Origin: Bispira polyomma
Taxonomy: Eukaryota
Length of the DNA: 64,000 nt
NCBI GenBank assembly: GCA_965649765.1
Contig: OZ287749.1
Coordinates: forward strand, 5,766,001 to 5,830,000
Direction: 5' to 3'
Shown: positions 2,152-63,810 of the stretch, one piece after another
How positions within the stretch are numbered: the stretch's first letter is position 1
Layout of the letters: each line of letters starts with the position of its first letter
Program-made: the position numbers and the translations under genes
Notes under the pieces: generated by a model
Databases searched by the model: none
The model's input: the letters and a program-made list of their open reading frames with translations, nothing else
Told to the model about the DNA's origin: nothing

Positions 2152-2343
2152 TGCCCTGTGAAGTAGCACTGACATTCTTGGCGTCACTGGCTCCGTTGAA
2201 GGCGATCATAGAAGCGTAATAGCTGGTGTTGTGTTGTAGACTTAAACCAGTAAAACAGTAACTGGCCTCTGTGTGGGGGAGTGAGATGTAAGGGTTGACA
2301 CCCTGGGTGTCAGGGGAGGTACCCACAGCAATCAGGTACTCAC
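2152..2343 (-). CDS. exon 46 (SEYLIAVGTSP...LQHNTSYYASMIAFNGA...QG); gene continues past window start
   Basis: ttttag / A|gtaagt; FN3-like; no stop. Confidence 0.88.
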
Positions 2344-14300: not shown

Positions 14301-17300
14301 GGACGATATTGTGACCCAACCGGTATTATGAATGCCCATGTATATATTAAAGGTTTGCCATTTATATGTATATCTGCTATAACATAAAAATTACTTTTTA
14401 AAACTTTAAAGTTATTGGTGATGACATGGCCACCGGGTGCCATTTCAAAATGCCACCGGTGTTTAAATATCCCTCTACTGACCTGTCTAAACTTGTGCTC
14501 ACAAACCTTGTGTAATTCCACTACTCCTTCCACAATATCCAGTAATTCACAGGAGCCGCCATCGTGATAATCGTAGTTAAACCCCTGGCACTTAGATGGT
14601 GGGTAAGCCAGGCAAATCTGGGCACACACTTCAGGTTCATCGTGGCTCTCGTGGAAAAATGGTTGCCATGCTAGCTTGCCTTCCTTGGGAGCTAAAAAAA
14701 GTTTTAAATGTAAATGTGTAGGTTCGTACTGTAGGTTTATCATCGGAGTTTACAGTTTACACCTCAGCCCAGGTTCTTCCACTTGTCAACTGTTGTTCAC
14801 TCTCAGCTCCCTTTACTGCAAGCCAAGAGACATAGCTTCTGGAAGGAGTACCAAATACTGTTAGCTACTAGTCAACAATATGGGGTCACAGTGTAATCTA
14901 CCACTAAAACGTAGATCACTCACACTTAATAACAAAAATAAATCACCGTAAAACATACCAGACGAATTTCATAGAAACAATCTGTGGAATCTAGATCAGT
15001 ATATCAATGGATTCGATTGTGATATGGACTGAATTGTGATCCGGTTCAGTGATCTGTTAATCTTCTTCAAGAGGCAGTTCAGCGGATTCAGATTAAATGG
15101 ATTACCCACAATTCATTGAAAAAATGGAGGGAAAGTCACAGAAAATTACTATTAAACTTAACTATACTAAATATACACTCAGAACAGCAAATCATCTTGA
15201 ATATTATCAAATTAAATTGAGGAGTACTCTATTGTAAATGAGTAATAGTACAATCTATATCATTGGTAGCCTTTTTGAATCTAAAAACAACTTTTTGCAT
15301 TTTACCAATCCAGCAAATCTAACTGATCCAGATCGTAGTCTAAATTGCACAGATTCAACAGATCCTTGTCTTGTAAAATGTGACAGATGCCTATGAGGCC
15401 ATTATGTATCATACACAGTACTGTTATAGTGGCAAAACCAAGTTATTGATTTTACTGTTAAAATGATCTATATATAGTAATAAACACATGTGTATGAAGT
15501 GAAGTAGACACCTTTAATGCAATGGTATATCAGTTGATGATGTTTTTAAATTAGTGATCTTCAGTCAGTAGTTTTTTGGGTCGTAAGCTTCAAACATCCA
15601 TGAAAAAATTAACATGAACTGTCTGTACAAATAAATACTGGTCTTACAAAATGAGGACACTATTAGCAACTGAGCACTGTAAGGATCACCCCTGTGACGC
15701 ATACACAGAATGTACTTCCGAAGTGTTTTATAGTTAACTTTTTGAATATAAGATGGCACTTCAATCAGATTATTAATGGGTGTTGTTAAATCGGTGACAA
15801 AAACCTTCTCAAGTTGAATATGAAGTGACCAAAGTTACTTTCACTACCTTACCAAGGATATTGTTAAAATACTACTTAAAATGGTGATATGTGACAAAAA
15901 AATAGCTTCACTTAAGTCAGGTTTTTTTCACTCAATCTTCTTCCTTTACATAATTTAAAGGTATAAATTAGTTTTAAAGAATCACTTTTGGCCTAAAGGG
16001 TAACCGACTCACTTACAGAGGACCTAGGTTTGATCTCAGCTTGGGGCATCCAGGTACTGTCAGATACAAAGTAGCTCAGATAACCACTCGAAATGGCATT
16101 GAATCCTCTCCTAGTGGCAGGCTAAAGAACCTTGGGGACATTGATAAAGGGTTTGATCCTCAAGCTTCTGTCTTCAATTAGGGGAATGACAGTGTTAGAT
16201 GGCCATCTCAAAACCGGGGGCCGATTTAAAACAGCACACCATGACAGGTGACTGTATTCCTTAGCAAATCTTGTACACAAACCATACCTACTAGATGTTT
16301 TTAACTGTTACTTACATATATATTCCATGTGTTTAGCTGAGTTGTTGGTTGTTCCTCCAGTTGAAATTTGACAGTGGGTGGCAAAATACATTGACAATGC
16401 TATCCTAAATCAAATTTAGCAGAATTGGAAACTATGCCATCCCAAAAACAAAATTAGCAGAATTATAAACTAAAGTAGAAACTTAAAATGATACACAAGT
16501 TAGATCCAGTTCTGTCTGTTAAAATACTTATAAAGACAATTATATAAGACTATAAAGTATATTTTCCAACAAATTTTCAATAATATTATTTTTCTATACT
16601 GGTGCAAGATGGCTGCACTTGTGTAGTCAAGAAAATACAAAAAGAGTGCTTTGAATCCCTAGAAAGCAGGGGTATTTGAAGACTTAAATACAGCAGAACC
16701 TCTATTATCTGAACATGGTTGGAGAGCAGGGGTTTGTATATTAGAAGGTCTTTCAAATATAGATCAGGCCTTTTAGTCTAAAACAACAGGAAAATATCAA
16801 TTTGGCAGAAGTGGAAATGTGTTCGTAAAATGGAAAACTTGCAAAACAGAAGTGTTGTTTTTTATATTATAGAGGTTCTACTGTACGAATTACTGAACAA
16901 AACGTTTATTTTTTATATTATAGAGGTTCTACTGTACGAATTACTGAACAAAACGTTTATTTTTTATATTATAGAGGTTCTATTGTACGAATTACTGAAC
17001 AAAACGTTTATTTTTTATATTATAGAGGTTCTACTGTACGAATTACTGAACAAAACGTTTATTTTTTATATTATAGAGGTTCTACTGTACGAATTACTGG
17101 ACAAAACGTTTATTTTTTATATTATAGAGGTTGAACAAAACATTTACTCACTGTGAAATCTAGTGAGGGGGTCATTTCCAAAATACGTAGAATCATCATC
17201 GTGCTGTGGTGTAAACTCCAACCAATTAATGATCTGGAATCCGTAGATTTCTTCACCATAACCGAGGCTGACCTAAATTATTTAGGACAAATTGTTTGAT

Positions 17301-19804: not shown

Positions 19805-19847
<43 letters not shown>

Positions 19848-49800: not shown

Positions 49801-52800
49801 GAGGAAGGGGCCATGGTGGCATAGTGGCCTAGCTCTTCCTACACATTCACTGGTCTCCAACCAATGTGGGTTTGAATCCTGTTTGTTTTTTCATGTGGGA
49901 AATGACCTAAGCTGTTGAAAGAAATTACAAACCCAACTAAATTCAAACTCTTTTACGTTTTATGTCAGCATTTTGCTGCATTTTAAACACCTCTACTGCC
50001 GCCCATTTCTCACCCATATACAGGTGCAGTAGAAAGTCTTTTTATTTATTTTTACTCCATATTTAAAAGGTCACACAGGGGCCACCACAGCCCCCCTGCA
50101 GGTCAAAATCCAAAACTTACGTCTCCAGCAGGATGAATGGACCAGTGTATTCACGAAGGGGGATATCTCCCTTAAGTACCCACAATGACATGGTCTCACT
50201 AATGGCTAGGGAGTTGGTCAGGTGATCAGATGGTCCCTGGTTTGACTCCTAATTAGGTGATTTGGTCTGGTGATCTGAAGGTTCCCGCTTCAACTCCAGC
50301 TAATGCCACTAGGTTTTTTGGTGTGGATAACATCCTTTGGATAGATGTGAACACAACATTGCCTACTGATAAAGACCAGGGCTATGTTGTAGGGCTATAT
50401 CTTTTGTAGAATAGGAGGCCACAGTGGCTTAGTGGTTAGAAGCACCTGCTTCTCAATCACTGGCCTCTCACCTGATGTGGGTTTGAATCCCATTTGTTCC
50501 TTCATTTGAGAAAATTTGTCAGGTACTTGCCGTTGGCCGGTGGTTTACAGTGGCTTCAGCATTGGGTTCTTCAATCGTTGAATTTGGCATAAAACCCAAC
50601 TAAATTCCAAATTTTTTTTTACAAAATGAGCTTGTTAGAGGATAATTTGTCAAATTAGGACGCTACATAGATTCTGATTTCGTAGTAATAAAACAAAAAT
50701 ATCACAAACTCCGAAATAGACTCACCATGTACACCCACAAGACCCTCTAGTCTACGAGTCACATGCTCTCCCCAGGTCTGGTTACACTTCATCACCATAG
50801 AAACCATGGCACCAACCACTAACTTGGTCCTGTCGTTGACTTGACTGCTTATGTGGTCATCTGGAAAAATTATTGGTTTAAGCCCTGTTTCCATTAATCA
50901 GTGTCTGTTATATGTCAGTTTTAAGTTAAAATTTTATTATTAGTTGCCTAAATTATAAATTTATTTTGCCATTTTGGTCAGCATTTCAAGTCAAAAAGTT
51001 TCACTTGACTTGACCTGACTGCTGACATGCTCATCTCTGGAAAGTATCATTGTTGCCTTAGGCCCTGTTTCTGTGCATGCATATGTGTTATCAGTACATG
51101 TCATACCTATCAATAAATGAAGCAGAAATGAGTATCATAAATTTATCATTGGTGGTCTGATTTAACATATCCTTCACCACTTTGCTGAGTATATTTTAAG
51201 TTGGAAATTTTGCTGCCCTCAAAATAACGATATAGATTTAAGTAAAGTGTACTTTTCATACAACTTCTATATTAAAAAACGCATCCAAAGCTATTTTTAA
51301 CAGATATACCTGATGCACACAGATGCATGAAAACACTCTTGGGAAAAAAATGACCTAAAAGCAATTTGTTTAGTAGAGAAAAATAACTTGCTCATGGTTG
51401 ACTGTAAAGGGTTTCAATCAAAGTTTATTTATGTTGAATGTTTACTTTATCCTTAAATTTGTAGTTTTTTGTTTGGCTTTCAGCCCAGAGGGAATGCTGG
51501 TGTATAAAACACTACCACAGAGAAAAGCTTTCCTTAAGTAAAATAGAATCTCCATCATTTAAATACACATTGTAATCACTAGTAAATCACCCTAAATAAC
51601 AGATATACGTCCCAGTAAAACATGTACAGTCTGAGTGTCTCAAATGAGGTCATTTATAATGATTCATTGTCACGTCACAATAGCACACAATGCAGTGAAA
51701 CCAGTTAATAATTTTGTTTTGATTTGATAGATATTTAACGTGCCAAATTGATGCCCTGTATGTTCAATACACAGATAACAGAAGCCAGTGAGAAAATATT
51801 CTATATTAATAGCTATAAAAACCTTTTTAAGATGTATATTACTGCCAGGTCTCACCCGGCACATAGACAACTGTACAATAGTGAATCCATCGGATGTAAT
51901 ATCGGGCCTACAGGCTGTCAAAGGCTTAAGTGAAAATGTAAATACCTTCAAAATCCCACGGTTCTTCAAATGCTCGCCATTGTAGCTCATTCAACAGCAG
52001 CTTTAATAAAATAGAAATATCACTCTGTTAATTGGGAAAATATGAATTGATAGCCATCATATTAATTACTACTTTTTTGCAACAAGAAAAGCTTGATAGC
52101 TACAGTTTTCATTTCTGCTTTTTACTTTTCTGCATTTTCTTAATTTTCAAATTCAACTATTAAGGTTAGTTATTTTCAGTGTACTAAACTGACATGATCA
52201 TCTGTTTACATTTACTAAACAGGGTGCCTACCTTGGGTGGACAGGTTTCTAGGTGTACCAGATGTACCAATGCATGCATGACCTCTTTGGCCGTACTGAC
52301 GTCATTGGTCAACACTTCTGTTGTCAATAAATACAGAGCATCTTCTGTCCCTGCTGCTCCGAGGGCGTCAATCATAACCAACCAGCCTTATAGAATGAAT
52401 ATACCAAAAGTATGTCAACAGATTGTATTAAAATTATATATTTTCATATTTATCCACCATTATCTGTACCCATGTCATGTTGTCCTGAAGTTTAATTGCT
52501 GTGCAGTTTATTTTTTTTGTACATTTTAATTAACAAACAGAACAAATATGAGTCTAATAACAAGATTTTAAAATTACATGTTCACGATATGTTTTTGAAG
52601 TGGAGTTATCCAACTTGTTGCGCATGATAACGAAAGCGATTGAGAACTGTAGTTCAAACTTTTAACACCCAAATGTAACCCATTTTTGAAACACAAAGTA
52701 CGCCCTCTGCAATCTTAGTTTAACCTTCTGAAAGCACAACCATTGTAAATGATATGTTAATTCATCTTGAATTAGAACCATTTGTACATTACTATTGAAC

Positions 52801-55800
52801 CCTTAAAATTGTTAAATATAAGTCAACCCTTTTGTCAATTAAACACAGGGACAAAAACTATCGCCAGGGACTGAAGAAAAATTTTGGTAATATGTTTGAG
52901 ATAGCTGGAGTCACTAACACACACCACAGACTATTACCGGCATTCAATAATGGCCCTTTGTATAATTTTTTAAACGGCAAACAATTTGCTATCCTGGGGA
53001 ACTGAAGAAAAGTAAAATAATATTTTTGGGATGTCAACTGATTGCTGATTGATTCTTGGAGTAACAAATGCCATCAATTGCTAGCCTGGAAAATAGGGGT
53101 TGAAAGAGACTTGTGTTAGAGTCCAAGATAAGTACAATTACTGCAACCCCTTTATGAATACTATAAATAGTACCTGATGATAGACAGTCGAACCCCTTGA
53201 TGTAGAACTCTGTTAAGTGATTTCCTCTTTTAATAGGAGAAAATTTTGTTGTCTCACCAAAAACCTTCTCTTTTAAAAATCAACCCTGTAAAATGGAAAT
53301 CTTGTTTAAGTAGAAGTATTTCTCGCGACCTTTTTGAGGTTTGACTTAAAGGGGTTCCACTGTACTGATACTGTTGACTTCACCTTTCTTCTCTTTGTAG
53401 GACAGAATCAGAGTCTTCAAGTCATCAAATGATACTCTTTGTAGGGCAACCCGGATCTGTCGGAAACAGGGGATTGACCGATGGGAATCTGACGAAGAGA
53501 AAAGTATAGATAAATACACAGTAGAAACTCTGTTATCCAAACTTTTGGTGTCTCCAAATTTATATTTATCTAAAGTTTTATACTAAAATGTCTCCTCTAT
53601 TTTATGAACATTCTATTATCCGAACAAAATCCTACTCTCCCAACATGTGTTCGGATAATAGAGGTTCTATTGTACATTCACAAATGTTAGCAATATTTTA
53701 GTGTTCAATTAATTTAAAATTCGGGTCAGTTTAAAACTGAATATGATGAATCATATAGTCAACTCACTAAGTCTATTTACATGTATAACCAATCATTTGT
53801 AATGATATATTGATCTATAAATTAATTCAATGACATTTCATTGACCAAGAATTACAAAATCATGAATTCAATGCACTGTATTTCTTAAATATGCAATATT
53901 TTCCTCGAGAACACACTAAAATAGGCAACATTTTACTTGATTTTATATCTGTTCTTCCTATTATTTCTGATCATACAGAATTCTATCTGAATACACAAAC
54001 AAAGCCAGTGAAAATTGTTTTGAAGTCTTAAGTACTGCTTCCATGCACACATACACGTCATCCATTCATGTCATACGTACACACCAGAAGATTAATCTCC
54101 CTTTGTATGTGGTTGTTTTATGACGTTTCAAATCTTATATAATTTTGGAGCTAATGCTGTTGACAACCTTAAAAGTTTCACATTTTTAATATATTAGTAT
54201 GTCCATATAAATGTTGTGACAATTAATTGTCAATATTACTGTAGTACTGAGCGGAAAAGGTATCTACTGTAAATAGTTTTATGTGGCTAAGTAACATGGC
54301 ACCATCATATATGTATTTCTTTAGACTGTTTCAGGTGTACGTACAGGTTATGTATATTCAGCATACAGATGCCCAAAGTTAGATGAAATATGTATAACTT
54401 TACATTGATCTAAATTTAGTTTGAAATACTGAACAAAATGGCGAAAGTATTTTCAAAATCAGAACCACAAATTAGAAAGTTATTACCTCAAACACAAATT
54501 ATCATTATATACTGTTCCCTACTTCATAATAACGTATGAGGTGAATGGATAACAGACACATGTAAACAAGGCTTATGGTATTACAAATTGTAGTCTTACC
54601 TTTATACTTAAGTACACAACTCATGTTAGATCTAATGATATCTTCAGCTTCAGTGAGGTTGTAGTTATCAGGAGGTATCTAAACAGAAATATACAAGTCC
54701 ACAAATGTCTATTAACATCCCTCAGACTGAGTCCCTCTCCCCACCCGCCCAGAAAAAAGACCAATAGAGGAAATAACAGTTTTCACAGATTAAGATGGCT
54801 TCGGCCTACCCTCAGCTATATCAAAATTTACATTAAATTTGTACAGATTTTACTGGATGGCCAAGATCAATGGTTGGCCGAAGCCAGCACCCACCCATGT
54901 ACTCTTTCTGTGTACATTTACTGACACTAATATACTACATCAAGTTATTATTCTGTACTATATACATCAGTAAACATAATACACAAATTGCAATCACTTA
55001 CAAGCCTATTACAAGACATACAAGGGTCAAGGGAGGCTAATGGTGGAAAAGCCTTGCTAAATAGGTAGGTTTTAAGCTTGTTTCTAAAACCAGCAAGGAG
55101 TCATGATGTATCACATTAGTCAACACCCCCAAGGTCACCTTTGGAAACTGTATTAACCTGTGGTTAAGAATGAAGAAATTTTGTAGGTATTTTTAACTAT
55201 TTTATACACATGACATGTGATTTTTAAAGATATGTTACACTTCCACATATTAACAGCATTTTTTAAATGATAGCCCCCCCCCGTTGAAAAAACACAAAGA
55301 CCCGGGGGCCTTTTTTTCTCAGAAAAAACAGTATGTACACTTTAAATTAGTCCCACAACAAATGAGATTTTCTGCCATAAACTTTTCCCACCTCTGTCGT
55401 CATGGGTTCAACAGTTGCTAGTAGACTTGCTGAAGCTGGGGGATTTTGAGGATCTGAAGGCAATAGCCGCTAGTTTCATTGGTGGGAGGTAAACCTTGGG
55501 CAATATGTGTACATGCGTTTGCCTGGTGGCTCAGATGACCACTTTATATGGCAGTCCTCTGTCAAACGGGGAAATTAGCACTCTAAATATCAGATAAAGG
55601 TAGATATATTGCGCTGATTATAAATATGAACACAAACAAATTCTAGTGAACTGCCCATTAATGGTGATATGACACAAACATCACAAATCTGACAAACTTG
55701 AGCCTCAAGGCTATTACATTAAATCGTCTGTAGATCTTACCAGATCTGCTTTTAGAGTAGTTTCCAGAAGGTCTTCCTTGTTAAACTCTGTCATCAAATC

Positions 55801-58800
55801 TAGATCAGAAGATTCTACACTCTCTAACTTCAGCCTTGATGTGGATTGACTGCCCATAGTTGGGAAGTCTACAAAACATGACACAAAAACAATAATCTTA
55901 AAGAAAGAAAGATGCTTTTAATCAACTGCACTTTAGTCCCAATAAAGTTCACGTTACTGTATGAGATCAAAGGCCAAGACCCTCACAGCCATTATATGCT
56001 AGTTATTGATATTTCTCACTGATCTTATATAGCAAACTTGTAGAGTCTTCTATTTAACATATGTGTACACATGTTCCCTGCATATTAAACAGTGGATAAA
56101 CTCCTCTATCATCCAAACCTGTTGGGAGAGCAAGATTTTGTGTTTGGATGATAGAAGGTTAGTAAACTCAAAGAGGCATTTTGGTATAAAAAGTGCTAGT
56201 GTTTTGAGGAAATCAATTTATTTAAATAATAGAAGTTTGGATAAAAGAGGTTTTACTATGTGTAGTTTGAAAACGCAGCTTTTAATTCAAAGGTGTTAAT
56301 TCAAAGGGCTAAACTAGGAGCATGTCCTGCAAATTATATTTTGGGTGTAACCCATTTGACCCCCAAGGTTGTCAGCTAACAATCGATGGCATTTGTTACT
56401 CCCTCTCACTAGGGGAAATTATTAGTACAGCAGTACACCCCCATTTATAAAAAAATATATGTGAGGCGTTATTGAATACCGGAAGCATCAAATAAAATTT
56501 TGGGGGTGTTGATTGCTTGTCGACAGATATCGGTTCTGGGAGACAGGTTCTAGCTGACAATTTAGGGGTCAAAAGGATTAAATACTTAATAGCACAATAC
56601 TTACTCATAGTGAATTCTGGATCAGCACCTGGTTCACTGAAACAGAAGTAAATACTAATATAAATAATTATTAATAGGACGTAACCTTATTTAATTGTAT
56701 CAGTTTTTTGTGTGCTGCTGAGCAAGCATGTAAATGCCTTAAGTACCTTTTGAATGTTGATGGATTTGAGGAAACCAAGATGACCCAATGTTTTATTATG
56801 CAATTACAATATCAAATCTAAGCTAATCTATAATTCTTTGCAGAGATTGACTCTTTTTTACCTCTTCTCAGAACACACACATATTCCCTCTACCTACAAT
56901 GCACACATCTTCCCTCTACTTACAATGCACACATATTTCCTCTACCTACAATGCACACATAATCCCTCTACCTAAAAAGCACACATATTCCCTCTAATTA
57001 CAATGCACACATATTTCCTTTACCTACAATACACACATATTCCCTCTACCCACAATGCACACATATTTCCTCTACCTACAATGCACACATATTCCCTCTA
57101 CCTACAATGCACACTTATTCCCTGTACAGCACACATTTTTGGGGGGTCGGAGATCTTTAAGATGACTAATTTGTGGGGACATAAAATAAAGCTCTTGTAA
57201 TTCAACCAATTTGCCATCATTAAAAGGGTTTATTGCTGAAATATGGGGTGCAAACTTTTACACTGTAAAAAAATATATTTTGATATTCTTCCAGACATGA
57301 CAAAAAACTTTATTTAGCTTTAATACTTTGTTGATATAAACTCTGTAATGTTTATTATATTGTAATTACAAATTGGTTTTCTTTCTTTTTAAAACACAAG
57401 TACCTTCAAAGTAAGCCTATCTTTTCTGTGCAGAAGGTTTTGTTAACTACTCTTTAGCAACACATGGCATAACACTGAAATAACAAGAATAGCCTTTAAA
57501 AAGGCACGTCAGCAGGCGGGGCAGCAACGGAAGATATTTCTCTGAATGTAGAAGTCAACTTTTAATGCATTACTATTTTAAATATTATTCTTGTTGGCCT
57601 AACCAAACCCCATGGATATCATATTTGGTATTGCAGGCTTTAAGTGTCCTATGAAGTGACTACAGCTGTAATACTTGAAAACCAAATATGTTTTAAAACA
57701 ACAATTAATACTTTTAATATTTTTGTATAGTGCTTATAAACTTGTCTTCACTCAACATACCCATATAGATGACTTTACAAAGGCCTAGACTCATCAAACC
57801 ATATTGACTTGATAAATATTACGTTAGATGACCTATCCTGTTGACGCTAGTTTCTTTATATTGGTATGATGTATTGATTTACTTTACTCATCTAAATAAA
57901 GACTATTTGCCAGAAATTCTCTTGTATTTTTTTTGGGTTTGAAAAGTCTTTGAGAATGCCATCCAATTTTTTGTATAATAACATATGCTAAAGAGCAACC
58001 AGTACACTACATATTCCTGCCACAATGACAAAAATGATTCCAAAGAATTTCTGAATCAACACTTCTACCCAGATCTACTCCAAACTTGACCAGGTTCTTC
58101 AATGGCCTCAAACAATTTCATATCAATCAGTTCTGCACTTTTTAATCCTTTCAACCCCAAGAGAAAACTATTGGTGATAACCGAAAGAAATCTATCCACA
58201 ATAGGTTACAAATAGCTGGAAACGTACACAGCCTACCTATGCCGACATTCAATAACGGCCTCACATACAATTTTTAAATGAGAAAGACTGCTTTACTAAC
58301 AATTTCCTATTGCAAGAAACTGAAGAAAAATAAAATAATACTTTTTTGGGGTGTTGATTGCTTGCCGACATGATAAATATGTTCCAGAAGTAAGAAATGT
58401 TGTTGGCTCCCGGTCGACAACCCAGGGGTCGAAATGGTTGTGTAATCTTGGTGACAAACAAACCAAGGACATGTGTGAAGACATAACTTACTTGGTCGAG
58501 GTCAATATATCTTAGGATTTACTCTAGTAGAACATGTGTGAAGACATAACTGACTTGGTTCAGGTAAATATATCCTAGGATTTACTCTAGTAGAACATGT
58601 GTGAAGACATAACTGACTTGGTTCAGGTAAATATATCCTAGGACTTACTCTAGTAGGACGATTGTGAAGACATAACTGACTTGGTCCAGGTAAATATATC
58701 CTAGGACTTACTCTAGTAGGACAATTGTGAAGACATAACTGACTTGGTCCAAGTAAATATATCCTAGGACTTACTCTAGTAGGATAATTGTGAAGACATA

Positions 58801-61800
58801 ACTGACTTGGTCCAGGTAAATATATCCTAGGACTTACTCTAGTAGGACACATGTGAAGACATAACTGACTTGATCGAGGTACATGTATCCTAGAGCTTAC
58901 TCTAGTAGGGCATGTGTGAAGACATAACTGACTTGGTCAAGGTAAATATATTATATGACTTACTCCAGTTCTGAGTCTTCTGGTGTAGAGAAATCATCCT
59001 GTATGTGGAATTCTTGAGGAACATGCGATGTTCTATGGACTGCAATTTTCTAAACACAAAGTATATAATAATGTATTTCTGAAGAAAGAAGTTGTTGTTC
59101 TTAAAACTTAAATTAGTCATTTTTTACCTTTATGTATGCACAAAGTTTTTTCCCTAAATAAAAAATAAATAATAAATGTCTCTAAATAAAAAAAATAATG
59201 AATACAACATTTCTAATAAAACACAAATTCTCTCGTTATCAAGTTTTGCATTCAAGTAAAAATAAAACATCTTAAATTACAGTCAAAAGGAAACTGAAAC
59301 AGTGATATTTAAACAGGGATTGTGTTACAAGTCAAGTTCAATATTTTGCATAAATGTATCAATTATTACCTTAATATGTTGGAGTTTAACACTGATCATT
59401 TTGGTGGTCTTGGACTTTACAATAAAATAGAATCAGAAATAGCTTTACTCTACATAAAGTACCTTGTTACCTTAACATGTTGGTGTTTAGCACTCTCCAG
59501 AGCTTTGGTCGTCTTGGTCTTTACAAAGTTCACTGTTATACCCGATGGCTCGGCCTGATAAACAGCGCTGTGACTTCCTGATACAGAAACAGATTATCTA
59601 GATTAGAGTACCGATTGTATAACTTCTTATCTATTTAAGATAAGGCGGAAGTGGAAATTGTTACAAGAAATTCATTTTTGGGTGGTTTGATAGCAAGAAA
59701 ATGTATAAAAGTAAAATCTTGGTGAAAAAAATACACTTATGAGTCAGGAATATAAAATTTGCCACTTCTAAATCTTCAGCCAAATTTTAAGAAAAACTGG
59801 GCAAATAAATAAAAGGAATTTAGGTAAGTGACACAAAAAGGTCGCAAAAATCTTGATTTCCACAAATATACTAAAACCATAAGACTTTCTAGGTGGCGAA
59901 TATCAGATATAGTGGCAATTCTAGAATTTTTACACTATTTAGTAAAATGCTCACAAAAGCCCGTAATACCATAAAACTTTTCAACCTTTTGAGAATCCAT
60001 TTTAATACAAATCATAACCCAGTTATACTTGCAGATATCTTGTTTATAATTATACAGTTGTAGCCCCTTTAAGTAAAACTCTGTTAGTTTGATTTTTCTT
60101 ATGTTGAGAAAAAAATGTGGTCACTCAAAGACAATCCTATTTGAGCAAAAAATATTTCTCGTATAGCCTCAATTGAAGTTTAATTTAAAGGCTTCCGCTG
60201 TGAATAAACATGACTTTATTCACATTTTTTGGCAACTGTGGCTTCTTGGCCGAGGTGTGTGCTCCAGTGAGTGACCTTATAGTTTATTATGAACTGGTCA
60301 AATTTTGTCTATATTCATTAATGTATTGTAATACTATTCTATCACTGAGTTCGGACTGAATGCAGGCTATTTTAAGCCATTTTTTTCTGACTAAAAATAA
60401 GGAAGTTTAAATATGCCAACTCAATTTCCAGTGTATTCAGTATGTAAACAACTCCCCACCTATTTATTAAAAAAGTATGTGTAAAATGAGATGTTCATGT
60501 TTTTGATACACACAGAGTGTTACGTTTTCCACATAATTATCACCTTCAATGCAGCCTACCAAGGAAAAAACTTAACCATTCATTATACAGATTTCTTTTT
60601 GCAGGGACACAATATGCCTTTTTTGAATATAAGGTACTTTGTTGTCAAAATACTATTATTAAAATTTGTCTATAGTTTATTACCTAAAATTACGGGGCCC
60701 CTTTTATGACAGATTTAATACCACAAGATGTAAAATCTGAATATTCAAAATTACTAACTTTACTCAATTTTTATCCTATTTACTATTAACTTTCACCAAA
60801 GTGCTGACCCTAAGGTCACCTTAAATATTAAAGGTGTCCTCAAACGTTGATAAGTTAATTAATGTTTGCATACAATAAGTTTAGAAAAGTTAGCATTAAC
60901 TTTAAATTTTCAAAATAAAATTTATATTCTCTTTCAGACCTAGGGCCATTTTAACTCTTGTTAACGTCACCTTAACATTTGGGTCATTTTGGTCACAGCT
61001 TTGCTTTTGATGCTCCCATTGTTTGGAATACTCTTCCTGAAGTGATTCGTGCTTTCCCCCACTAGCCTGTTTTAGAAAGCAGCTTAAAACCCACTTGTAC
61101 AGTAAAGCATACCCACCTTAGTCTCAATCATCCCCCAGCGAACTCTGTGGTACTGACCTTATTCTCTCCCTTATATTGGAAATTGGATTACTGTCTTTTG
61201 TGTTGTTGCGCCTCAGAGTCCCCTTCATTAAGGGGAGATTAAGCACTATAAAAGTCTAATTACAATTACAATTAACAAGTAAAAATATAATATATGGTGG
61301 TGTTGTACCTACATGTAATACTAAGTCAAATAAAATATATATATGTGCAGTTTCCTGTCGGATTGAGTTTTCATTATTTAATAAGCTAAGTATGTAATTA
61401 CCTTTTACATCAGTTTGGTTAATCCTGATATCTGTGAGAACAAAGGTCGGTTAGCCAGAATTCTTCTGTGCTACATGTGGTGTGTGGACGAAGTATTTCT
61501 TAACTTTTGGCATTACTTAAAGATGAATCAACCACTTTTAAGTTATTAAGTTTGAGGTAACCTTTTAGTGACAGGGAATTTAGTTCTGGGATGGTTCATA
61601 CATGTGTAAACCAGCCATTAGATGAAGCTTACTATTAAACTCAGCAAAGATTTGACTCAGGAACTCCAGTGCTTGTTGTACAGGTCGTGTGACCATGCTT
61701 GAATGACTTGGTTTGAGTCATGGACTTTAGGTAAGCTGGAAAAAGTAATGCGTGTTCAAAGTATTTGAGTAATTTTATTGGAAACCAGACATAACTAGGG

Positions 61801-62047
61801 TGACGGTCTGAGTGTAAATAAAATAGAATTTAAAAAAAACAACAATATTATAAGTTTACCTTCGTGTCCCGACTCATTTGTACTGTACGCCCACCTCTGT
61901 CCCTTGTCTATCTGGGACCTAGAGATCACCAGCTTTGAGGACATTAGGTTGAGGATGGTTTTCTTGGCTGACAACACAGCGGCTCTCTCGCTACTTTCAT
62001 AGTAAATGGTGAGAACTTCTCCATCCTCACTCAATTCAAACAGCAAG
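2152..62047 (-). CDS. Giant multi-exon gene (46 exons traced, partial at both ends): LLT/vitellogenin-N-like + M23/LECT2-like peptidase + SAP + FN3-like + PAN multidomain protein
   Basis: 46 exons, each with AG acceptor and GT donor, join in continuous phase without stops (6830 nt); motifs recognised by eye. Confidence 0.9.
2324..2600. repeat. 41-bp tandem array containing exon 46 acceptor
   Basis: CACAGCAATAAGGTACTCGCCTAAAATAGAACAA units, about 7 copies. Confidence 0.9.
3147..3842. mobile_element. MITE, PIF/Harbinger-like
   Basis: TIRs GGGCCGTATTCAC / GTGAATACGGCCC with subterminal GATCAA/AGCTGA repeats. Confidence 0.75.
4680..4922. mobile_element. MITE, PIF/Harbinger-like
   Basis: TIRs GGGCCGAATTCACAAA / TTTGTGAATACGGCCC. 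Confidence 0.75.
4980..5153 (-). CDS. exon 45 (VDLKTIGHAP...WEGFHDPDSGI)
   Basis: ctctag / A|gtaagt; WxGFxDPxSGI motif. Confidence 0.9.
5965..6262 (-). mobile_element. tRNA-derived SINE
   Basis: Minus-strand head GTGGCTTAGTGGTT...GGTTCCGAGTTCTACTCC; body similar to 15985-16250. Confidence 0.55.
6255..6800. repeat. 71-bp tandem array containing exon 44 3' end and donor
   Basis: About 7.5 copies of ~58 nt exon end plus GTAAGATATCTAC. Confidence 0.93.
6736..6902 (-). CDS. exon 44 (DDLSLIKYGEFGLG...VRVTNN)
   Basis: gtatag / G|gtaag. Confidence 0.87.
7110..7215. mobile_element. short palindromic MITE (family of 10155-10261)
   Basis: GGGTGGTCTTCACAAAAGGGCTAAG ... CTTAGCCCTTTTCTGAATACCGGCC. Confidence 0.65.
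7300..7469 (-). mobile_element. tRNA-derived SINE fragment
   Basis: Reverse complement of head at 20083 and 50414. Confidence 0.6.
7825..8005 (-). CDS. exon 43 (DGPHFITVRALNTVEYGG...DNTPP...VNAT)
   Basis: tcacag / AC|gttagt. Confidence 0.88.
9807..9977 (-). CDS. exon 42 (GNWDGIYDYETGILLYTWSVGT...LELE)
   Basis: ttacag / G|gtacg; WxGxxDxExGIxxYxWxVGT repeat motif. Confidence 0.9.
9915..10370. repeat. ~114-bp tandem array containing exon 42 acceptor and 5' exon part
   Basis: Three copies; third interrupted by a MITE. Confidence 0.88.
10155..10261. mobile_element. 107-bp hairpin MITE with CAG target-site duplication
   Basis: Near-palindrome TATTCACGAAGGGACTTAGCCAAG...CTTGGCTAAGTCCCTTTGTGAATA; CAG both sides; empty site visible in sister repeat units. 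Confidence 0.85.
10693..10787 (-). CDS. exon 41 (YITDGEGSLCLFNG...RRMAS)
   Basis: caccag / G|gtggg. Confidence 0.83.
11835..12006 (-). CDS. exon 40 (GYTSILSSEGVLVDLTTP...PNYR)
   Basis: ttccag / AG|gtttg. Confidence 0.88.
12229..12425 (+). mobile_element. tRNA-derived SINE
   Basis: A box CAGTGGTTAG, B box GGTTCGAATC, non-tRNA tail. Confidence 0.7.
13105..13228 (-). CDS. exon 39 (SSQYYYYERRGIGKVAEF...VRNKL)
   Basis: ttacag / G|gtatgt. Confidence 0.86.
13590..14190. mobile_element. two adjacent copies of piggyBac-like MITE family
   Basis: Shared AACTATCACTGTCATGGAACTGAAG, CACACCACAGACTACTTC and TTCCTATTGCGAGGAACT blocks, also near 24258, 35540, 43338, 52850, 58142. Confidence 0.6.
14507..14691 (-). 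CDS. exon 38, PAN/apple-like (CAQICLAYPPSKCQGFNYD...CELL)
   Basis: ttttag / AAG|gtttg; CxxxC...CxxFxY...CxL pattern. Confidence 0.88.
15985..16250 (+). mobile_element. tRNA-derived SINE
   Basis: Degenerate A/B boxes; body shared with 5965-6262 and about 42020-42240. Confidence 0.5.
16690..17140. repeat. Tc1/mariner-type MITE whose right end is amplified as a 51-bp tandem array (16850-17140)
   Basis: Left TIR CAGCAGAACCTCTATTA; about 5.5 units containing TATAGAGGTTCTACTGTA. Confidence 0.8.
17152..17272 (-). CDS. exon 37 (VSLGYGEEIYGFQIINW...TRFH)
   Basis: atttag / A|gtgagt. Confidence 0.86.
17310..17490. repeat. ~40-bp minisatellite
   Basis: AAACATACTTCAGTACCCAGTGTATTAGG, about 5 copies. 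Confidence 0.85.
18038..18244 (-). CDS. exon 36 (TMHTGQRLYFKITARNNAG...DMTLP...QTQ), FN3-like
   Basis: tgacag / CAG|gtaatg; YxxxxxAxNxAG FN3 signature. Confidence 0.9.
18530..18810. repeat. ~90-bp tandem repeat, 3 copies
   Basis: TTAACAGGCTGATAT...TTTAACATTGCCAACACACTGCCT. Confidence 0.85.
18954..19066 (-). CDS. exon 35 (AVEDDRSPVSMTYCVGTFKGGCD...TE), FN3-like
   Basis: atgtag / GAG|gtgag. Confidence 0.85.
19793..19861. repeat. poly-C / (CA)n / poly-C microsatellite
   Basis: Directly visible. Confidence 0.9.
19890..20690. repeat. ~80-bp tandem array containing exon 34 3' end and donor
   Basis: About 7 copies of ACTTACCCAGTTCAATGACATAGGCAGGCTCTGTATAATCCCTT with variable (CA)n spacer. Confidence 0.9.
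20083..20331 (+). mobile_element. tRNA-derived SINE with TATAATCCCTT target-site duplication
   Basis: Head GGGGCCGCGGTGGCCTAATGGTTAG, B-box-like GAGTTTGACTCC, AATTCAAAT tail, 11-bp direct repeat flanks. Confidence 0.85.
20627..20759 (-). CDS. exon 34 (NCTNCEEVEERSRRKR...YVIEL)
   Basis: ctacag / G|gtaagt; RRKR site. Confidence 0.87.
20976..21249. mobile_element. MITE (inverted relative of 45016-45494)
   Basis: Shares end GTGTGAACGCTAC and internal palindrome TTTTGAACATGTTCAAAA. Confidence 0.7.
21607..21823 (-). CDS. exon 33 (ARMDLQLIPLRIELY...DNTPPDF...KA)
   Basis: tttcag / GCG|gttagt. Confidence 0.87.
22700..23240. mobile_element. Helitron-like element with 156-bp internal tandem repeats
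   Basis: Units at about 22746, 22902, 23058; 3' end CCCTATGTATCCGCCAGAGCAGGTGACACAAAAA. Confidence 0.6.
23351..23508 (-). CDS. exon 32 (ARITPRIGSGVWG...KFPLEVR)
   Basis: tcccag / AG|gtttg. Confidence 0.88.
24258..24565. mobile_element. piggyBac-like MITE
   Basis: TTAA|CCCTTTCACC ... GGTCAAAAGAG|TTAA. Confidence 0.65.
24623..24693 (-). CDS. exon 31 (RMGIDGYYGSDFSVNLCVLSMKAV)
   Basis: atacag / GTG|gtaag; phase joins exons 30 and 32. Confidence 0.85.
24760..25092. mobile_element. MITE
   Basis: TIRs CTAGGTCTCATT / AATGAGACCTAG. Confidence 0.65.
26809..27093. repeat. apparently perfect 140-bp tandem duplication followed by poly-C
   Basis: Units start at 26809 and 26949. Confidence 0.9.
27256..27900 (+). 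mobile_element. L2/CR1-clade LINE 3' fragment (degenerate ORF2 C-terminus and tail)
   Basis: ICRSCYYHIRDIKRIRNHL...LDYCNSLL...LHWLPI; related tails at 38490-38775, 42430-42500, 60985-61275 and 26170-26370 (-). Confidence 0.85.
27918..28083 (-). CDS. exon 30 (LRKQIENAIAQIFGNEFD...GPVVLVF)
   Basis: tttaag / C|gtaagt. Confidence 0.85.
30263..30384 (-). CDS. exon 29 (SVDSLLNTTIADVIK...FQAW)
   Basis: tgacag / TGG|gtaac. Confidence 0.85.
30838..30982 (-). CDS. exon 28 (VSLGVRWCSTKSEECQD...TTAS)
   Basis: gtgtag / T|gtaagt. Confidence 0.83.
31807..31907 (-). CDS. exon 27 (TAAGSEPVESNVQ...GVLK)
   Basis: ttacag / AAG|gtaac. Confidence 0.83.
32994..33200 (-). CDS. exon 26, Cys-rich (CFGLK...YCSYQSDCLGLSCCLD...YDPC...)
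   Basis: tcccag / A|gtgagt; 207 nt open. Confidence 0.88.
33828..33966 (-). CDS. exon 25, SAP-like motif (LDDKELKAALTLRGKSTSGARQTLLNRY)
   Basis: tggcag / A|gtgagt; matches SAP consensus LxxxELKxxLxxRGLxxSGxKxxLxxRL. Confidence 0.88.
34871..35031 (-). CDS. exon 24 (NFTKSLGLPGFDKLK...LKVE)
   Basis: tttcag / GAG|gtaag. Confidence 0.88.
35333..35504 (-). CDS. exon 23 (GKTISSGQ...GRKKRAVFDN...LE)
   Basis: acaaag / A|gtgagt; acidic linker plus RKKR. Confidence 0.85.
36002..36190 (-). CDS. exon 22 (VGAGDVIGTV...HVHFSM...INPSRY...VWL), M23 HxH
   Basis: tatcag / CTG|gtaag; VxxGDxIG, HxH and NP motifs. Confidence 0.9.
36144..36360. repeat. 109-bp duplication of exon 22 acceptor region
   Basis: CACCACCTGGGGTTGG..ACTGTACCAATGA..CCTGATAGA..ATTACAACACAG occurs twice. 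Confidence 0.85.
36832..36972 (-). CDS. exon 21 (IVAPFNGYI...LNHKQ), M23 core
   Basis: tttcag / CAG|gtaca; APFxG motif. Confidence 0.88.
37440..37830 (+). mobile_element. non-LTR retrotransposon 3' fragment (C-terminal Cys knuckle)
   Basis: Plus-strand translation GILPLRIETGRF...LCQVCKSNEVEDEMYFLCTCPLYNSIR. Confidence 0.75.
38810..38981 (-). CDS. exon 20 (YQEARTLLDLVFGPK...HEGVD...GSP), M23 HxxxD
   Basis: ccgcag / CCG|gtaag; HEGVD motif. Confidence 0.9.
39290..39620. repeat. 57-bp tandem array containing exon 19 donor
   Basis: CACAGCCTTACCCTTCTAACAACAGTTT..AGTCTTAGATATATGGACAGATGTAAA, about 5.5 copies. Confidence 0.92.
39596..39768 (-). CDS. exon 19 (KTMKRQALLEVW...WKLLLEG)
   Basis: ccatag / GG|gtaagg. 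Confidence 0.87.
40350..41155. repeat. 21-bp purine-rich minisatellite
   Basis: GAGAGACAGCAYRAAGAAYGG, roughly 38 copies. Confidence 0.95.
41409..41592. repeat. ~35-bp tandem array containing exon 18 donor
   Basis: TACATTACCAGGTCCACC..AGTATATCTGTACTA, 5 copies. Confidence 0.9.
41572..41729 (-). CDS. exon 18 (DNRPYWFDFS...TGVDL)
   Basis: tttcag / CTG|gtaatg. Confidence 0.87.
43028..43098 (-). CDS. exon 17 (ISAAVAAVLAAKDKIVEANIFDK)
   Basis: ctaaag / G|gtaat. Confidence 0.82.
43338..44167. mobile_element. piggyBac-like MITE carrying a nested insertion
   Basis: TTAACCCTTTTGACCC ... GGGGTCAAAAGGTT; family blocks interrupted at 43463-44005. Confidence 0.65.
43463..44005. mobile_element. TGTA...TACA element with CCGG target-site duplication (Ginger1-like MITE or solo LTR)
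   Basis: CCGG|TGTAACACC ... GGTACTACA|CCGG; uninterrupted site ACTATTACCGGCATTC near 52930. Confidence 0.7.
44474..44616 (-). CDS. exon 16 (AIVDTVTTTIPWAWDEIK...GAAR)
   Basis: ttgcag / AG|gtgaa. Confidence 0.87.
45016..45494. mobile_element. MITE
   Basis: TIRs GCGTTCACACTGTC / GACAATGTGAACGC; relative at 20976-21249. Confidence 0.75.
46302..46637 (-). CDS. exon 15 (EYGHEDLK...VMTLYN), amphipathic helices
   Basis: tgccag / AAT|gtgagt; 336 nt open. Confidence 0.9.
47066..47211 (-). CDS. exon 14 (APLAGHVKVDIHDGAWA...LNILG)
   Basis: tcacag / GGG|gtaag. Confidence 0.87.
47512..47702 (-). CDS. exon 13 (YSNVTSLEHQRMRR...DIAI)
   Basis: ctccag / G|gtgagt; RMRR site. Confidence 0.87.
47690..47900. 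repeat. 66-bp tandem array containing exon 13 acceptor
   Basis: ATTACTGTACCTGGAGGTTTAAATAAAC, about 3.5 copies. Confidence 0.88.
48647..48780 (-). CDS. exon 12 (AAELLLQVALTDEEDNVRRNA...ELYR)
   Basis: ttccag / AG|gtgtt; HEAT-like helices. Confidence 0.85.
49069..49280 (-). CDS. exon 11 (DPFHHRQ...ALGNAG...QHPE)
   Basis: ALGNAG motif of LLT helical domain; caccag / GAG|gtgagt. Confidence 0.9.
49263..49492. repeat. 79-80-bp tandem array containing exon 11 acceptor
   Basis: GTGGTGGAAGGGGTCTGGTGGG..GATACAGTA..TAAGACCACCTGTGTAT, 3 copies. Confidence 0.9.
50414..50612 (+). mobile_element. tRNA-derived SINE
   Basis: GGCCACAGTGGCTTAGTGGTTAG...GGGTTTGAATCCC; sister at about 49807-49950. Confidence 0.7.
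50726..50860 (-). CDS. exon 10 (DDHISSQVNDRTKLVVGAMV...GVH)
   Basis: ttccag / G|gtgagt. Confidence 0.85.
51946..52000 (-). CDS. exon 9 (LLLNELQWRAFEEPWDFE)
   Basis: ttaaag / G|gtatt; bridges phase 0 to 1. Confidence 0.72.
52232..52386 (-). CDS. exon 8 (GWLVMIDALGAAGTEDA...CPPK)
   Basis: DALGAAGT motif typical of vitellogenin/MTP helical domain; AAG|gtagg donor. Confidence 0.88.
53384..53488 (-). CDS. exon 7 (DSHRSIPCFRQIRVALQRVSFDDLKTL...)
   Basis: cgtcag / G|gtgaa; start of LLT alpha-helical region. Confidence 0.82.
53519..53673. mobile_element. Tc1/mariner-type MITE
   Basis: TIRs CAGTAGAAACTCTGTTATCC / GGATAATAGAGGTTCTATTG; relatives near 12660, 16690, 30070, 39116, 56092. Confidence 0.7.
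54600..54678 (-). CDS. exon 6 (IPPDNYNLTEAEDIIRSNMSCVLKYK)
   Basis: gtttag / G|gtaag. Confidence 0.82.
55741..55868 (-). CDS. exon 5 (NFPTMGSQSTSRLKLES...LKADL)
   Basis: ttgtag / CTG|gtaag. Confidence 0.82.
56605..56636 (-). CDS. exon 4, 32-nt micro-exon (DEPGADPEFTM)
   Basis: tttcag / A|gtaagt; bridges phase 2 to phase 1. Confidence 0.7.
56870..57135. repeat. 26-bp minisatellite
   Basis: TGCACACATATTCCCTCTACCTACAA, about 10 copies. Confidence 0.92.
58470..58972. repeat. 60-bp tandem array containing exon 3 donor
   Basis: GTGAAGACATAACTGACTTGGTCCAGGTAAATATATCCTAGGACTTACTCTAGTAG, about 8 copies; last unit is the true junction GACTTACTCCAGT. Confidence 0.9.
58964..59049 (-). CDS. exon 3 (KIAVHRTSHVPQEFHIQDDFSTPEDSEL)
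   Basis: gtttag / GA|gtaagt; phase-consistent. Confidence 0.8.
59471..59577 (-). CDS. exon 2 (GSHSAVYQAE...HQHVK)
   Basis: tatcag / AAG|gtaac; phase matches neighbours. Confidence 0.85.
60985..61275 (+). mobile_element. L2-like LINE/SINE 3' end
   Basis: WNTLP...FRKQLKTHL-type terminus and (TACAAT)n tail. Confidence 0.65.
61860..62047 (-). CDS. exon 1 in window (LLFELSEDGEVLTIYY...NESGHE), LLT N-terminal beta region
   Basis: tttatag acceptor, G|gtaaac donor; KKTILNLMS resembles vitellogenin-N. Confidence 0.85.
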
Positions 62048-62509: not shown

Positions 62510-63810
62510 AAAAATCCATCAGTGTCAGATATTGGACAAGATATCGTACATGTGGTTAAAAATACACCTCTCAGTGATTTTTTGATTCTGTCAGATATTG
62601 TGTCTAATTTTAACTAACCATATCTTCATTAATATTTCATTAAGATTGAAATTGGTAAAGCTATCACAAAGTACTTAATAACAGCTTTCTAATGATACCA
62701 AAACGAAAAATGTAGGTGAAGTATTTATAAAGATATAGTCATAATTTCATAATAAACTAAAAAAGTTGTAAGATAACTACATAAAATGTGACGTTTAACA
62801 ATTGAATGACGTCAATCCCATCCGATATTGCATCAGTGAAACAATTTTCACGTGCACTGACACAGACACGGATTACTAGGAAAAGCACGGATCACGTATG
62901 ATAGCGCTTACTGAAAGCTGTATTTTTAACAAGACAATATATAAGGATCTATATTTCACGCTCACGGACCCATGTACTGATCGTGCCATATCGCAGAGGT
63001 GTATTTCCAGGTTTAATATTTAAATGATTACGATGTTCAGTCTAAAACCAAGGATTTCAATATAAAATGTTTTATTGTATAACCTTATAAGATTTGCAAC
63101 TTGAAAATAAAAAATTTCAAAAACAAAAATATTTTTACCATTTATTGAAGTCCATTTCTGGTTTTTGTGCTTCTTGTGCTGAAATATAGAAGACAGACAA
63201 TATGGGTGTCATTGATGAAAATAACAATACATGGCACATAGTCAACATTGTATTATATTAACAAAGTCCATTGTGTAAGGAAATAGTAAAATATATATAT
63301 GGAGTTGGACCACTATTAATTTTGTTATATGTTATCTTATAGCCTGTTGCGCTACACTGAAGTCCGGCCAAATGCTTGCCCTACAAATCACACAGTTCAA
63401 TTTTGGAATTTCCCACCGACCATAACGTCCACATCCAGTTGACGTCTTTTTTTAAAAAAAAAAAGACTCGCCGTTAAAAAACTTACACATAAATTTTAAA
63501 CGTCACAAACTCACTGAGATATGATCTAATCAATAACCTCCACTCTAAAAACAGCAACTTTAACCCACAATATCATCATTACAATTTTACTAGAATTAAA
63601 ATTTGTGAGAAGTATCTTTATGCACATAATAAGGGCTTTCTGGTGATACAAAAACGGGAATTTTAGGTCAAGTATTCATATAGATACAGCCATTTAATCA
63701 ATTGAAATTTTCGGGGAAACGAAGCTGACACGATATCTAACAGGATCAAAACCATGTGTACGATATCTCGTACGATATCTAACACTGATGGATTTCACTG
63801 AGAGGTGTAT
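62510..63810. mobile_element. degenerate DNA-transposon relic(s)
   Basis: Inverted ATACACCTCTCAGTGA (62563) / TCACTGAGAGGTGTAT (63795); GCTTTCTGGTGATACAAAAAC block also near 29850. Confidence 0.5.

What the first reader, a model, noticed from the sequence alone, without database searches (positions are those of the whole stretch)
2152..62047. Giant LLT / M23-peptidase / SAP / FN3 / PAN mosaic protein
Seen: one continuous spliced frame of about 2276 codons joining a vitellogenin/MTP-like module, amphipathic helices, an M23/LECT2-like domain, a SAP-like motif, Cys-rich and beta-rich regions, FN3-like repeats and a PAN-like module. Established: canonical vitellogenin and apolipophorin follow the LLT module with DUF1943/vWD, not these domains. 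Inference: an uncharacterised secreted lipoprotein-like polyprotein, plausibly an innate-immune effector combining lipid, peptidoglycan and DNA binding.
Basis: partly seen in the sequence, partly recalled or inferred. Interest (0 to 1): 0.8.

Follow-up and report, generated by a model that had tools for sequence, protein, structure and literature searches.

The report
Giant membrane-anchored lipid-transfer-like protein
This window holds about half of a real, intact gene for a roughly 5,000-residue cell-surface protein whose head looks like the fat-carrying proteins apoB and vitellogenin but sits on a long stalk anchored in the membrane; relatives occur in many marine invertebrates and amphioxus, and I found no paper describing them.

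Summary
This is only residues 109-2384 of a ~4,975-residue, 79-exon gene that starts about 21.5 kb beyond the window and ends about 37 kb before it. The named modules hold up in relatives: LLT fold (MTP, lipovitellin, apoB), LECT2-like M23, SAP, PAN, FN3. Two corrections. (1) It is not simply secreted: it ends in EGF domains, a transmembrane helix and a short tail, and has furin-type sites, one present in 17 of 17 relatives. (2) The M23 keeps its zinc ligands but has Asn for the second catalytic His, and no relative has a full site, so it is probably a pseudo-peptidase. Colinear relatives (~40% identity) occur in amphioxus, acorn worms, echinoderms, molluscs and an annelid, with automatic names only. 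This chromosome has five copies (dN/dS 0.13). Best reading: an undescribed membrane-tethered, convertase-processed LLTP subfamily that handles lipid at the cell surface; an immune role is untested. No RNA evidence was obtained. The scan earlier noted this gene's first exon and its head-to-head neighbour on adjacent DNA (s1-590172).

The parts
63139..63178 (-). ATG and likely signal peptide lie beyond the window at +78107-77993 and +85538-85368
   Evidence: (paralogue has a 40-nt phase-1 exon at the same place)
54676..62047 (-). LLT N-terminal beta-barrel, in-window part (aa 109-290); includes the 32-nt exon 56636-56605
   Evidence: fold of amphioxus relative matches apoB barrel Z 21.8 and lipovitellin Z 21.0; exons
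47672..54678 (-). LLT alpha-helical domain (aa 290-591)
   Evidence: Vitellogenin_N in 21 of 24 relatives, best E 1e-17; weak hit on window exon 49280-49069; Foldseek MTP E 5e-19
47660..47671 (-). Furin-type site A, RMRR (aa 592-595), at the end of the LLT helical domain
   Evidence: R-x-K/R-R at this junction in 17 of 17 relatives; chance 0.044 per 50-residue window
47069..47632 (-). beta-1: amphipathic beta-hairpins (aa 605-692), where LLTPs have their first lipid-lining sheet
   Evidence: strands in both models; beta hydrophobic moment z 2.3; not covered by the VIA alignments to LLTPs
38972..47068 (-). About 300-residue amphipathic helical region (aa 693-990)
   Evidence: long helices in model; helical moment z 9.1; only noise-level fold matches
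36014..38974 (-). M23/LECT2-like domain over three exons: His1032 (38848), Asp1036 (38836), His1111/His1113 (36133, 36127) kept; Asn1080 (36867) in place of the second catalytic His
   Evidence: profile's best PDB hit LECT2 E 6e-7; fold Z 13.5, rmsd 2.5, 115 aligned; Asn column aligns with the Y-A-H His of Csd3; motif table
35367..35378 (-). Furin-type site B, RKKR (aa 1197-1200), after the M23 domain
   Evidence: 10 of 13 relatives
33840..33933 (-). SAP-like motif (aa 1277-1308), flanked by conserved cysteines
   Evidence: Pfam SAP E 0.0012 on the exon frame; above cut-off in two relatives; two helices in model
30845..33831 (-). Cys-rich beta module (aa 1311-1460), single here, 5-12 copies in some mollusc and sea-star relatives
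   Evidence: no Pfam name; weak Atlas lead DUF4773 at 0.83
21658..28035 (-). beta-2: long amphipathic beta-sheet (aa 1520-1690)
   Evidence: strands of 15-25 residues in model; moment z 5.7; no PDB sequence hit; conserved in 23 relatives
20712..20729 (-). Basic site C, RSRRKR (aa 1718-1723), before the repeat stalk
   Evidence: relatives have only K/R-R-A/S here (8 of 13), no full motif
14507..14691 (-). PAN/apple-like exon inserted in the repeat stalk
   Evidence: PAN_1 21.3 bits vs cut-off 21.4; above cut-off in two relatives
2152..20693 (-). First part of the FN3-like repeat stalk (aa 1730-2384); it continues below the window to cadherin-like and EGF domains, a transmembrane helix (aa 4935-4953, about window -36.9 kb) and a short tail
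   Evidence: in-window repeats cross-match downstream repeats; fn3 E 2e-14 only for the downstream part in a relative; TM

Best explanation
A single gene encodes a ~4,975-residue type I membrane precursor of an undescribed subfamily of large lipid transfer proteins. Shown: one open spliced frame, LLT fold at the N-terminus, amphipathic sheets and helices behind it, a long FN3-like stalk, EGF domains, a transmembrane helix, conserved R-x-K/R-R sites. Inferred: furin-type convertases cut the precursor in the secretory pathway (after the LLT helical domain, after the M23 domain, and near the membrane); the pieces stay together, as apolipophorin II and I do; the LLT head with beta-1, the amphipathic helices and beta-2 forms an apoB-like lipid-binding surface split by inserted M23, SAP-like and Cys-rich modules; the stalk holds it away from the cell, and the membrane-near cut can release it. 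It would capture, carry or hand over lipid (from lipoproteins, food or microbial membranes) at a cell surface. The M23 is a zinc-binding, non-catalytic docking module like LECT2.
For: Frame and controls. LLT fold: Foldseek MTP E 5e-19, lipovitellin 3e-16, bee vitellogenin 1e-14, apoB 2e-14; VIA Z 17-22. TM helix here, in the neighbouring half-copy and in 13 of 25 long relatives. Site A in 17/17, site B in 10/13, membrane-near site in 10/12 relatives; apolipophorin and apolipocrustacein are cut at such a site within the LLT module (PMC1783640). Amphipathicity z 9.1, 5.7, 2.3 against 0.3-1.8 for barrel and FN3 parts. The model of residues 612-1790, which lacks barrel and helical domain, still draws MTP (E 5e-4) and vitellogenin (E 3e-3) in Foldseek, and its top Atlas match spans residues 7-1080, from beta-1 to beta-2. 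No His at the second catalytic position in 19 of 19 relatives (residue role from PMC9662197).
Against: No expression, localisation, cleavage or lipid-binding data. The fold match covers barrel and helical domain (model 1-580), not the lipid-cavity sheets; pTM of both models is low (0.49, 0.41) and they are of an amphioxus relative. The beta-1/beta-2 pairing rests on weak hits. Three amphioxus relatives end in sushi domains (with a C-type lectin) and have no TM, so anchoring is not universal and those versions look immune-like. Tandem expansion (five copies on one chromosome) is as typical of defence genes.
Confidence: 0.45

Rival explanations
1. Innate-immune pattern-recognition or effector protein: LLT head binds microbial lipids, M23 binds peptidoglycan without cutting it, SAP-like motif binds extracellular nucleic acid.
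For: LECT2-like M23; zinc ligands and HxH kept in this gene and its paralogue; M23 exons are the best conserved between paralogues, 85% vs 72%; sushi and C-type lectin ends in amphioxus relatives; tandem copies; vitellogenin and apolipophorin have reported defence roles (PMC1783640). Not exclusive of the best explanation.
Against: No expression or challenge data. Most relatives have lost zinc ligands too (His+Asp of motif I in 3 of 19, HxH in 7 of 19, both in none). dN/dS 0.09-0.17 in every region that could be scored, no sign of diversifying selection. SAP hit is weak in several relatives.
Confidence: 0.25
2. Adhesion, receptor or matrix protein that uses the LLT head as a protein-binding module, perhaps paired with the product of the head-to-head EMI/EGF/FN3 gene.
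For: FN3, cadherin-like, PAN, EGF and TM make a classic receptor/adhesion stalk; an opposite-strand signal-peptide-like exon lies about 2.1 kb from the ATG and an EGF/FN3 gene faces the paralogue; the barrel and helical domain of LLTPs are protein-interaction parts (own knowledge).
Against: Does not explain the conserved amphipathic sheets and helices. Cytoplasmic tail is short here and not conserved among relatives.
Confidence: 0.17
3. Convertase-activated membrane-inserting effector: the LLT head is a prodomain, and the cut at site A frees beta-1, the long helical bundle and beta-2 to insert in a target membrane.
For: Invariant cut right before amphipathic hairpins; helical bundle draws ClyA-family pore formers (HblL1 Z 10.6, AhlB 10.7, MakE 10.0; ClyA Foldseek E 0.03).
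Against: These Z values are below the tool's noise level for helical bundles (about 13), tied with TTYH, synaptophysin and designed bundles. No hydrophobic stretch above 1.63 outside the TM.
Confidence: 0.1
4. Two or more adjacent genes joined by the model, or a pseudogene.
For: No RNA reads could be laid; introns up to 14.8 kb at the 5' end; many database relatives are fragments that stop after the LLT or M23 part.
Against: Phase-compatible GT-AG chain with no stop over 79 exons; colinear ~5,000-residue relatives in four phyla; one relative of 5,047 residues is called on a 16,248-nt sequencing-run contig, so it must be nearly one uninterrupted frame from the LLT helices to the TM; dN/dS 0.13.
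Confidence: 0.03

Closest known systems
Large lipid transfer proteins: MTP large subunit, apoB, lipovitellin/vitellogenin
   Same: Signal peptide, N-terminal beta-barrel plus alpha-helical domain (Foldseek E 5e-19 to 2e-14; VIA Z 17-22), followed by amphipathic beta and alpha regions.
   Different: Only 10-15% identity in structural alignments; no DUF1943, DUF1081 or vWD hit; inserted M23, SAP-like and Cys-rich modules; FN3/cadherin-like/EGF stalk and a transmembrane anchor, which to my knowledge no described LLTP has. The genome's better Vitellogenin_N matches lie elsewhere (C3, C6).
Insect apolipophorin II/I and crustacean apolipocrustacein
   Same: Very large LLT precursor with a conserved R-x-K/R-R convertase site in or at the end of the LLT module (PMC1783640).
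   Different: Their site is near residue 725 between motifs N19 and N20; here it is at 592-595 and equivalence was not tested. They are soluble and end in vWD.
LECT2 (vertebrate M23-fold protein)
   Same: Best sequence-profile and fold match of the M23 domain; zinc ligands kept, one catalytic His missing (PMC9662197).
   Different: LECT2 is a small free protein; here the domain is embedded and flanked by basic sites; most relatives have also lost zinc ligands.
Uncharacterised ~4,600-7,500-residue proteins of Ptychodera, Glandiceps, Saccoglossus, Branchiostoma, Patiria, Amphiura, Owenia, Lottia, Batillaria, Potamilus (e.g. XP_078620548.1, XP_038050862.1, LOTGIDRAFT_236952)
   Same: Same domain order, 38-44% identity exon by exon. 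This is the gene's own family.
   Different: Some have 5-12 Cys-rich repeats or sushi/lectin ends. Database names are automatic (uncharacterized, SELE, JAG1, vitellogenin domain-containing); six identifiers found no paper.

Membership tests
LLTP superfamily | N-terminal LLT module (Vitellogenin_N; beta-barrel plus helical domain) | tested here: met
   Pfam hit in 21 of 24 relatives; fold matches. On the window's own exons only a weak hit.
LLTP superfamily | Lipid-lining C- and A-sheets after the helical domain | tested here: inconclusive
   beta-1 and beta-2 are amphipathic; weak Foldseek hits to MTP and vitellogenin; not covered by VIA alignments.
LLTP superfamily | Binds or transfers lipid | not testable with these tools
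   Needs biochemistry.
Vitellogenin / apolipophorin / apoB subfamilies | DUF1943, DUF1081 and/or C-terminal vWD; soluble | tested here: not met
   No such Pfam hit in full-length relatives; TM helix present.
MTP | About 890-residue ER-lumenal protein ending after the A-sheet | tested here: not met
   About 4,975 residues with stalk and TM.
Active M23 peptidases (LytM, lysostaphin) | H(x)nD and HxH motifs | tested here: met
   HEGVD 1032-1036 and HVH 1111-1113 in this gene; complete in none of 19 relatives.
Active M23 peptidases (LytM, lysostaphin) | Second His about 30 residues before HxH (LytM His260) | tested here: not met
   Asn1080 here; His in 0 of 19 relatives, Asn in 14; column aligned to the Csd3 His.
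LECT2-like pseudo-peptidase | M23 fold, zinc ligands kept, a catalytic His lost | tested here: met
LECT2-like pseudo-peptidase | Extra loop over the groove; no activity in assays | not tested
   Model coordinates not available; the primary paper was not held.
SAP domain | 35-residue two-helix motif scoring above the Pfam cut-off | tested here: inconclusive
   18.9 vs 23.9 bits on the window frame; 30 bits in two relatives, none in two others.
SAP domain | Nuclear location and DNA binding | tested here: not met
   Lies between signal peptide and TM, so extracellular by topology; binding itself not testable.
ClyA-family pore-forming proteins | ClyA helical bundle with hydrophobic tongue | tested here: inconclusive
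   Z 9.5-10.7, below noise for bundles; no hydrophobic stretch.

The most novel reading that the evidence does not exclude
A fourth, membrane-tethered branch of the LLTP superfamily, kept across lophotrochozoans and invertebrate deuterostomes and not found in vertebrates or insects in these searches: a convertase-armed, apoB-like head on a long stalk that docks on microbes or lipoproteins through a dead M23 domain and extracts or inserts lipid at the target membrane, working with the product of its head-to-head neighbour.
Probability: 0.2. Interest if true: 0.85.

Novelty: new variant of a known kind. Interest (0 to 1): 0.62.

Why it matters
LLTPs are known as soluble carriers (vitellogenin, apoB, apolipophorin) or an ER chaperone (MTP). 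An old, conserved, membrane-anchored and convertase-cut form would add a branch to the family and offer a candidate route for lipid uptake or hand-over at cell surfaces in molluscs, annelids, echinoderms, acorn worms and amphioxus. It also shows a LECT2-like M23 domain inside a large animal protein, relevant to where LECT2 came from. These genes are mislabelled in databases (vitellogenin, SELE, JAG1) or split into fragments, which can mislead studies that count vitellogenin genes. The sequences are public, so the novelty lies in recognising the family and its anatomy.

Tried and rejected
The joined model was never sent to a search or folding tool: it was joined only inside scripts for frame, motif, hydropathy and dN/dS checks; BLAST comparisons were exon by exon, and folding used an amphioxus relative (P0069). 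The aligner's exon 58712-58649 lies in a 63-nt tandem array and was rejected for a 32-nt exon matching the paralogue. The copy at C2:6.29 Mb is not a mere haplotype duplicate (flanks about 89% identical). beta-1 and beta-2 are not detectable repeats of each other or of the barrel (hhalign probability under 1). LLT profile finds no LLTP in PDB by sequence, only HEAT-like designs. beta-2 profile found only family fragments. Long frames at 40115-41350 are a 21-nt tandem array, not exons. P0081 was too long for the contig look-up, so its organism is unknown. Six literature searches aimed at the family found nothing describing it (plus 90); the library lacks most subscription papers.

Full report
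Setting. The window is G000:C2:5,766,001-5,830,000 of a 1.035-Gb animal genome in 75 contigs, about 36% G+C, no N. Six-frame reading shows many short coding-like frames on the minus strand among introns with tandem arrays.

Check of the observation. The longest exon (46637-46302) found 56 relatives in the large protein search, including long proteins of amphioxus, acorn worm, sea star, annelid, snail and bivalves. A search with an amphioxus member returned 24 proteins of 2,960-7,473 residues, nearly all called uncharacterised or hypothetical. From 17 relatives I built a 5,096-column profile and a spliced aligner. After replacing one weak exon in a tandem array by a 32-nt exon seen in the paralogue, this stretch has 46 exons, 6,830 nt, 2,276.7 codons, all GT-AG, no stop. 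Score 2,182 bits; opposite strand -570; shuffled profiles -435 to -458. The paralogue at C2:5.56-5.62 Mb has equal exon length in 34 of 37 cases, 72% identity and dN/dS 0.13 over 1,753 codons. No RNA could be laid.

The gene is larger than the finding. With 304 kb of flanking DNA the model has 79 exons and 4,975 residues, from an ATG at window +85538 with a plausible, only moderately hydrophobic signal peptide to about window -37,000. The finding covers residues 109-2384. Below the window come more FN3-like repeats, a cadherin-like domain, EGF domains and a transmembrane helix at 4935-4953 (hydropathy 2.87, next best 1.63). A stop follows about 22 residues later, as in a neighbouring half-copy, though a splice donor overlaps it and a further tail exon is not excluded. 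Thirteen of 25 long relatives have such a helix; several of the others are truncated, and three amphioxus proteins end in sushi domains, with a C-type lectin, instead. A relative of 5,047 residues is called on a 16,248-nt run contig, which argues that head, stalk and anchor are one frame.

Domains. LLT: Vitellogenin_N hits 21 of 24 relatives. A model of amphioxus residues 25-720 (pLDDT 77, pTM 0.49) matches MTP (E 5e-19), lipovitellin (3e-16), bee vitellogenin and apoB; VIA aligns model 4-575 to lipovitellin 17-620 at Z 21.0, rmsd 6.7, 498 residues. So barrel and helical domain are LLT; no DUF1943 or vWD is detected. Behind lie beta-1 (605-692), 300 residues of helices and, after the inserts, beta-2 (1520-1690); all three are more amphipathic than shuffles (z 2.3, 9.1, 5.7), barrel and FN3 parts are not. 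A second model (612-1790; pLDDT 67, pTM 0.41) still draws MTP and vitellogenin weakly, and its best Atlas match, a myxobacterial protein, spans residues 7-1080 (TM 0.37 by the match). This hints that beta-1 and beta-2 form one split lipid-lining sheet, but is not proof. M23: best matches are LECT2 by profile (E 6e-7) and fold (Z 13.5, rmsd 2.5, tied with bacterial LytM domains). This gene keeps HEGVD and HVH, but the His that lies about 30 residues before HxH in active enzymes (PMC9662197) is Asn1080; the column aligns with the Csd3 His. None of 19 relatives has His there, and none has both zinc motifs complete. SAP and PAN are just under cut-off on window exons and above it in some relatives. 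The SAP-like motif is extracellular by topology and flanked by conserved cysteines. Pfam fn3 is strong only for repeats below the window; the in-window repeats are called FN3-like because they cross-match those. The Cys-rich module has no name and is repeated 5-12 times in some relatives.

Processing sites. R-x-K/R-R occurs at 592, 1197, 1718-1720 and twice near the C-terminus. Site A is present in 17 of 17 relatives, site B in 10 of 13, a membrane-near site in 10 of 12, against 0.044 per window by chance. Apolipophorin II/I and apolipocrustacein are cut by furin-type enzymes at such a site within the LLT module (PMC1783640). Cleavage here is inferred, not shown.

Family in this genome. Five copies on contig 2 carry the LLT helical, amphipathic, M23 and beta-2 exons; four more M23-like loci lie on contig 1; better Vitellogenin_N matches are on contigs 3 and 6. 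I see an opposite-strand signal-peptide-like exon about 2.1 kb from the ATG and such a gene facing the paralogue; I did not test the amphioxus claim. That note calls the pair secreted; the TM helix says otherwise for this gene.

How it most likely works. A membrane-anchored precursor is cut by convertases; an apoB-like lipid-binding head with non-catalytic docking modules is shown on a long stalk or shed, and captures or hands over lipid at a cell surface (0.45). Rivals: immune recognition (0.25, compatible with the above), adhesion or receptor role with its neighbour (0.17), membrane-inserting effector (0.10; ClyA-like matches are at noise level), several genes (0.03). Shown: frame, selection, folds in a relative, motifs, anchor. 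Inferred: cleavage, lipid binding, lack of peptidase activity, biological role.

Novelty. The sequences of the family are public but carry automatic names, and no paper on them was found (open-licence library only). It is an LLTP by its head, but not a vitellogenin, apolipophorin, apoB or MTP. To my knowledge no membrane-anchored LLTP has been described. Verdict: real; a new variant of a known kind; interest 0.62. The joined model was not searched or folded.

Noticed in passing
G000:C2:5,693,000-5,702,000 (window -73006 to -64019, + strand; loci L012-L013): 3' part of another copy of this family (12 exons, 53-91% identity, with EGF and TM), tail-to-tail with this gene; no matching 5' part seen in the fetched DNA.
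   Followed up: partly
G000:C2 about 5,625,000-5,667,000 (window -141k to -99k, + strand) and window +87,660: EMI/EGF/FN3-type gene head-to-head with the paralogue; its repeats resemble this protein's stalk repeats. A signal-peptide-like exon faces this gene's ATG at about 2.1 kb.
   Followed up: partly
G000:C1:14,038,000-14,619,000: Four further loci with an M23-like domain and the same N-terminal lead-in, possibly a more distant subfamily or LECT2-like genes.
   Followed up: no
window:36002-38981 vs paralogue: M23 exons have both lower dN (0.087) and lower dS (0.62) than neighbouring regions (dS up to 2), as do LLT helical exons (dS 0.85): possible gene conversion between copies.
   Followed up: no
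window:6263-6797: 71-nt tandem array (7.5 copies) that repeats the 3' end of exon 6902-6736, including its coding motif.
   Followed up: no
window:20332-20687 and 19887-20082: 74-88-nt tandem arrays repeating the end of exon 20759-20627; possible alternative exon ends.
   Followed up: no
window:26188-27960 and 37385-37774: Decayed LINE-like reverse-transcriptase remnants in introns (by eye).
   Followed up: no
window:1-878, 40348-41143, 58466-58969: Intronic tandem arrays (147-, 21- and 63-nt units); the 21-nt array gives long spurious open frames on both strands.
   Followed up: yes
P0081: A 5,047-residue relative from an unnamed sequencing run lacks sites B and E and is among the most distant; its organism could extend the family's range.
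   Followed up: partly
P0069:1500-1715 and 1318-1457: Atlas look-alikes of beta-2 in ciliates and bacteria (0.92-0.93) and of the Cys-rich module in giant viruses and molluscs (0.91-0.94); recognition scores low, leads only.
   Followed up: no
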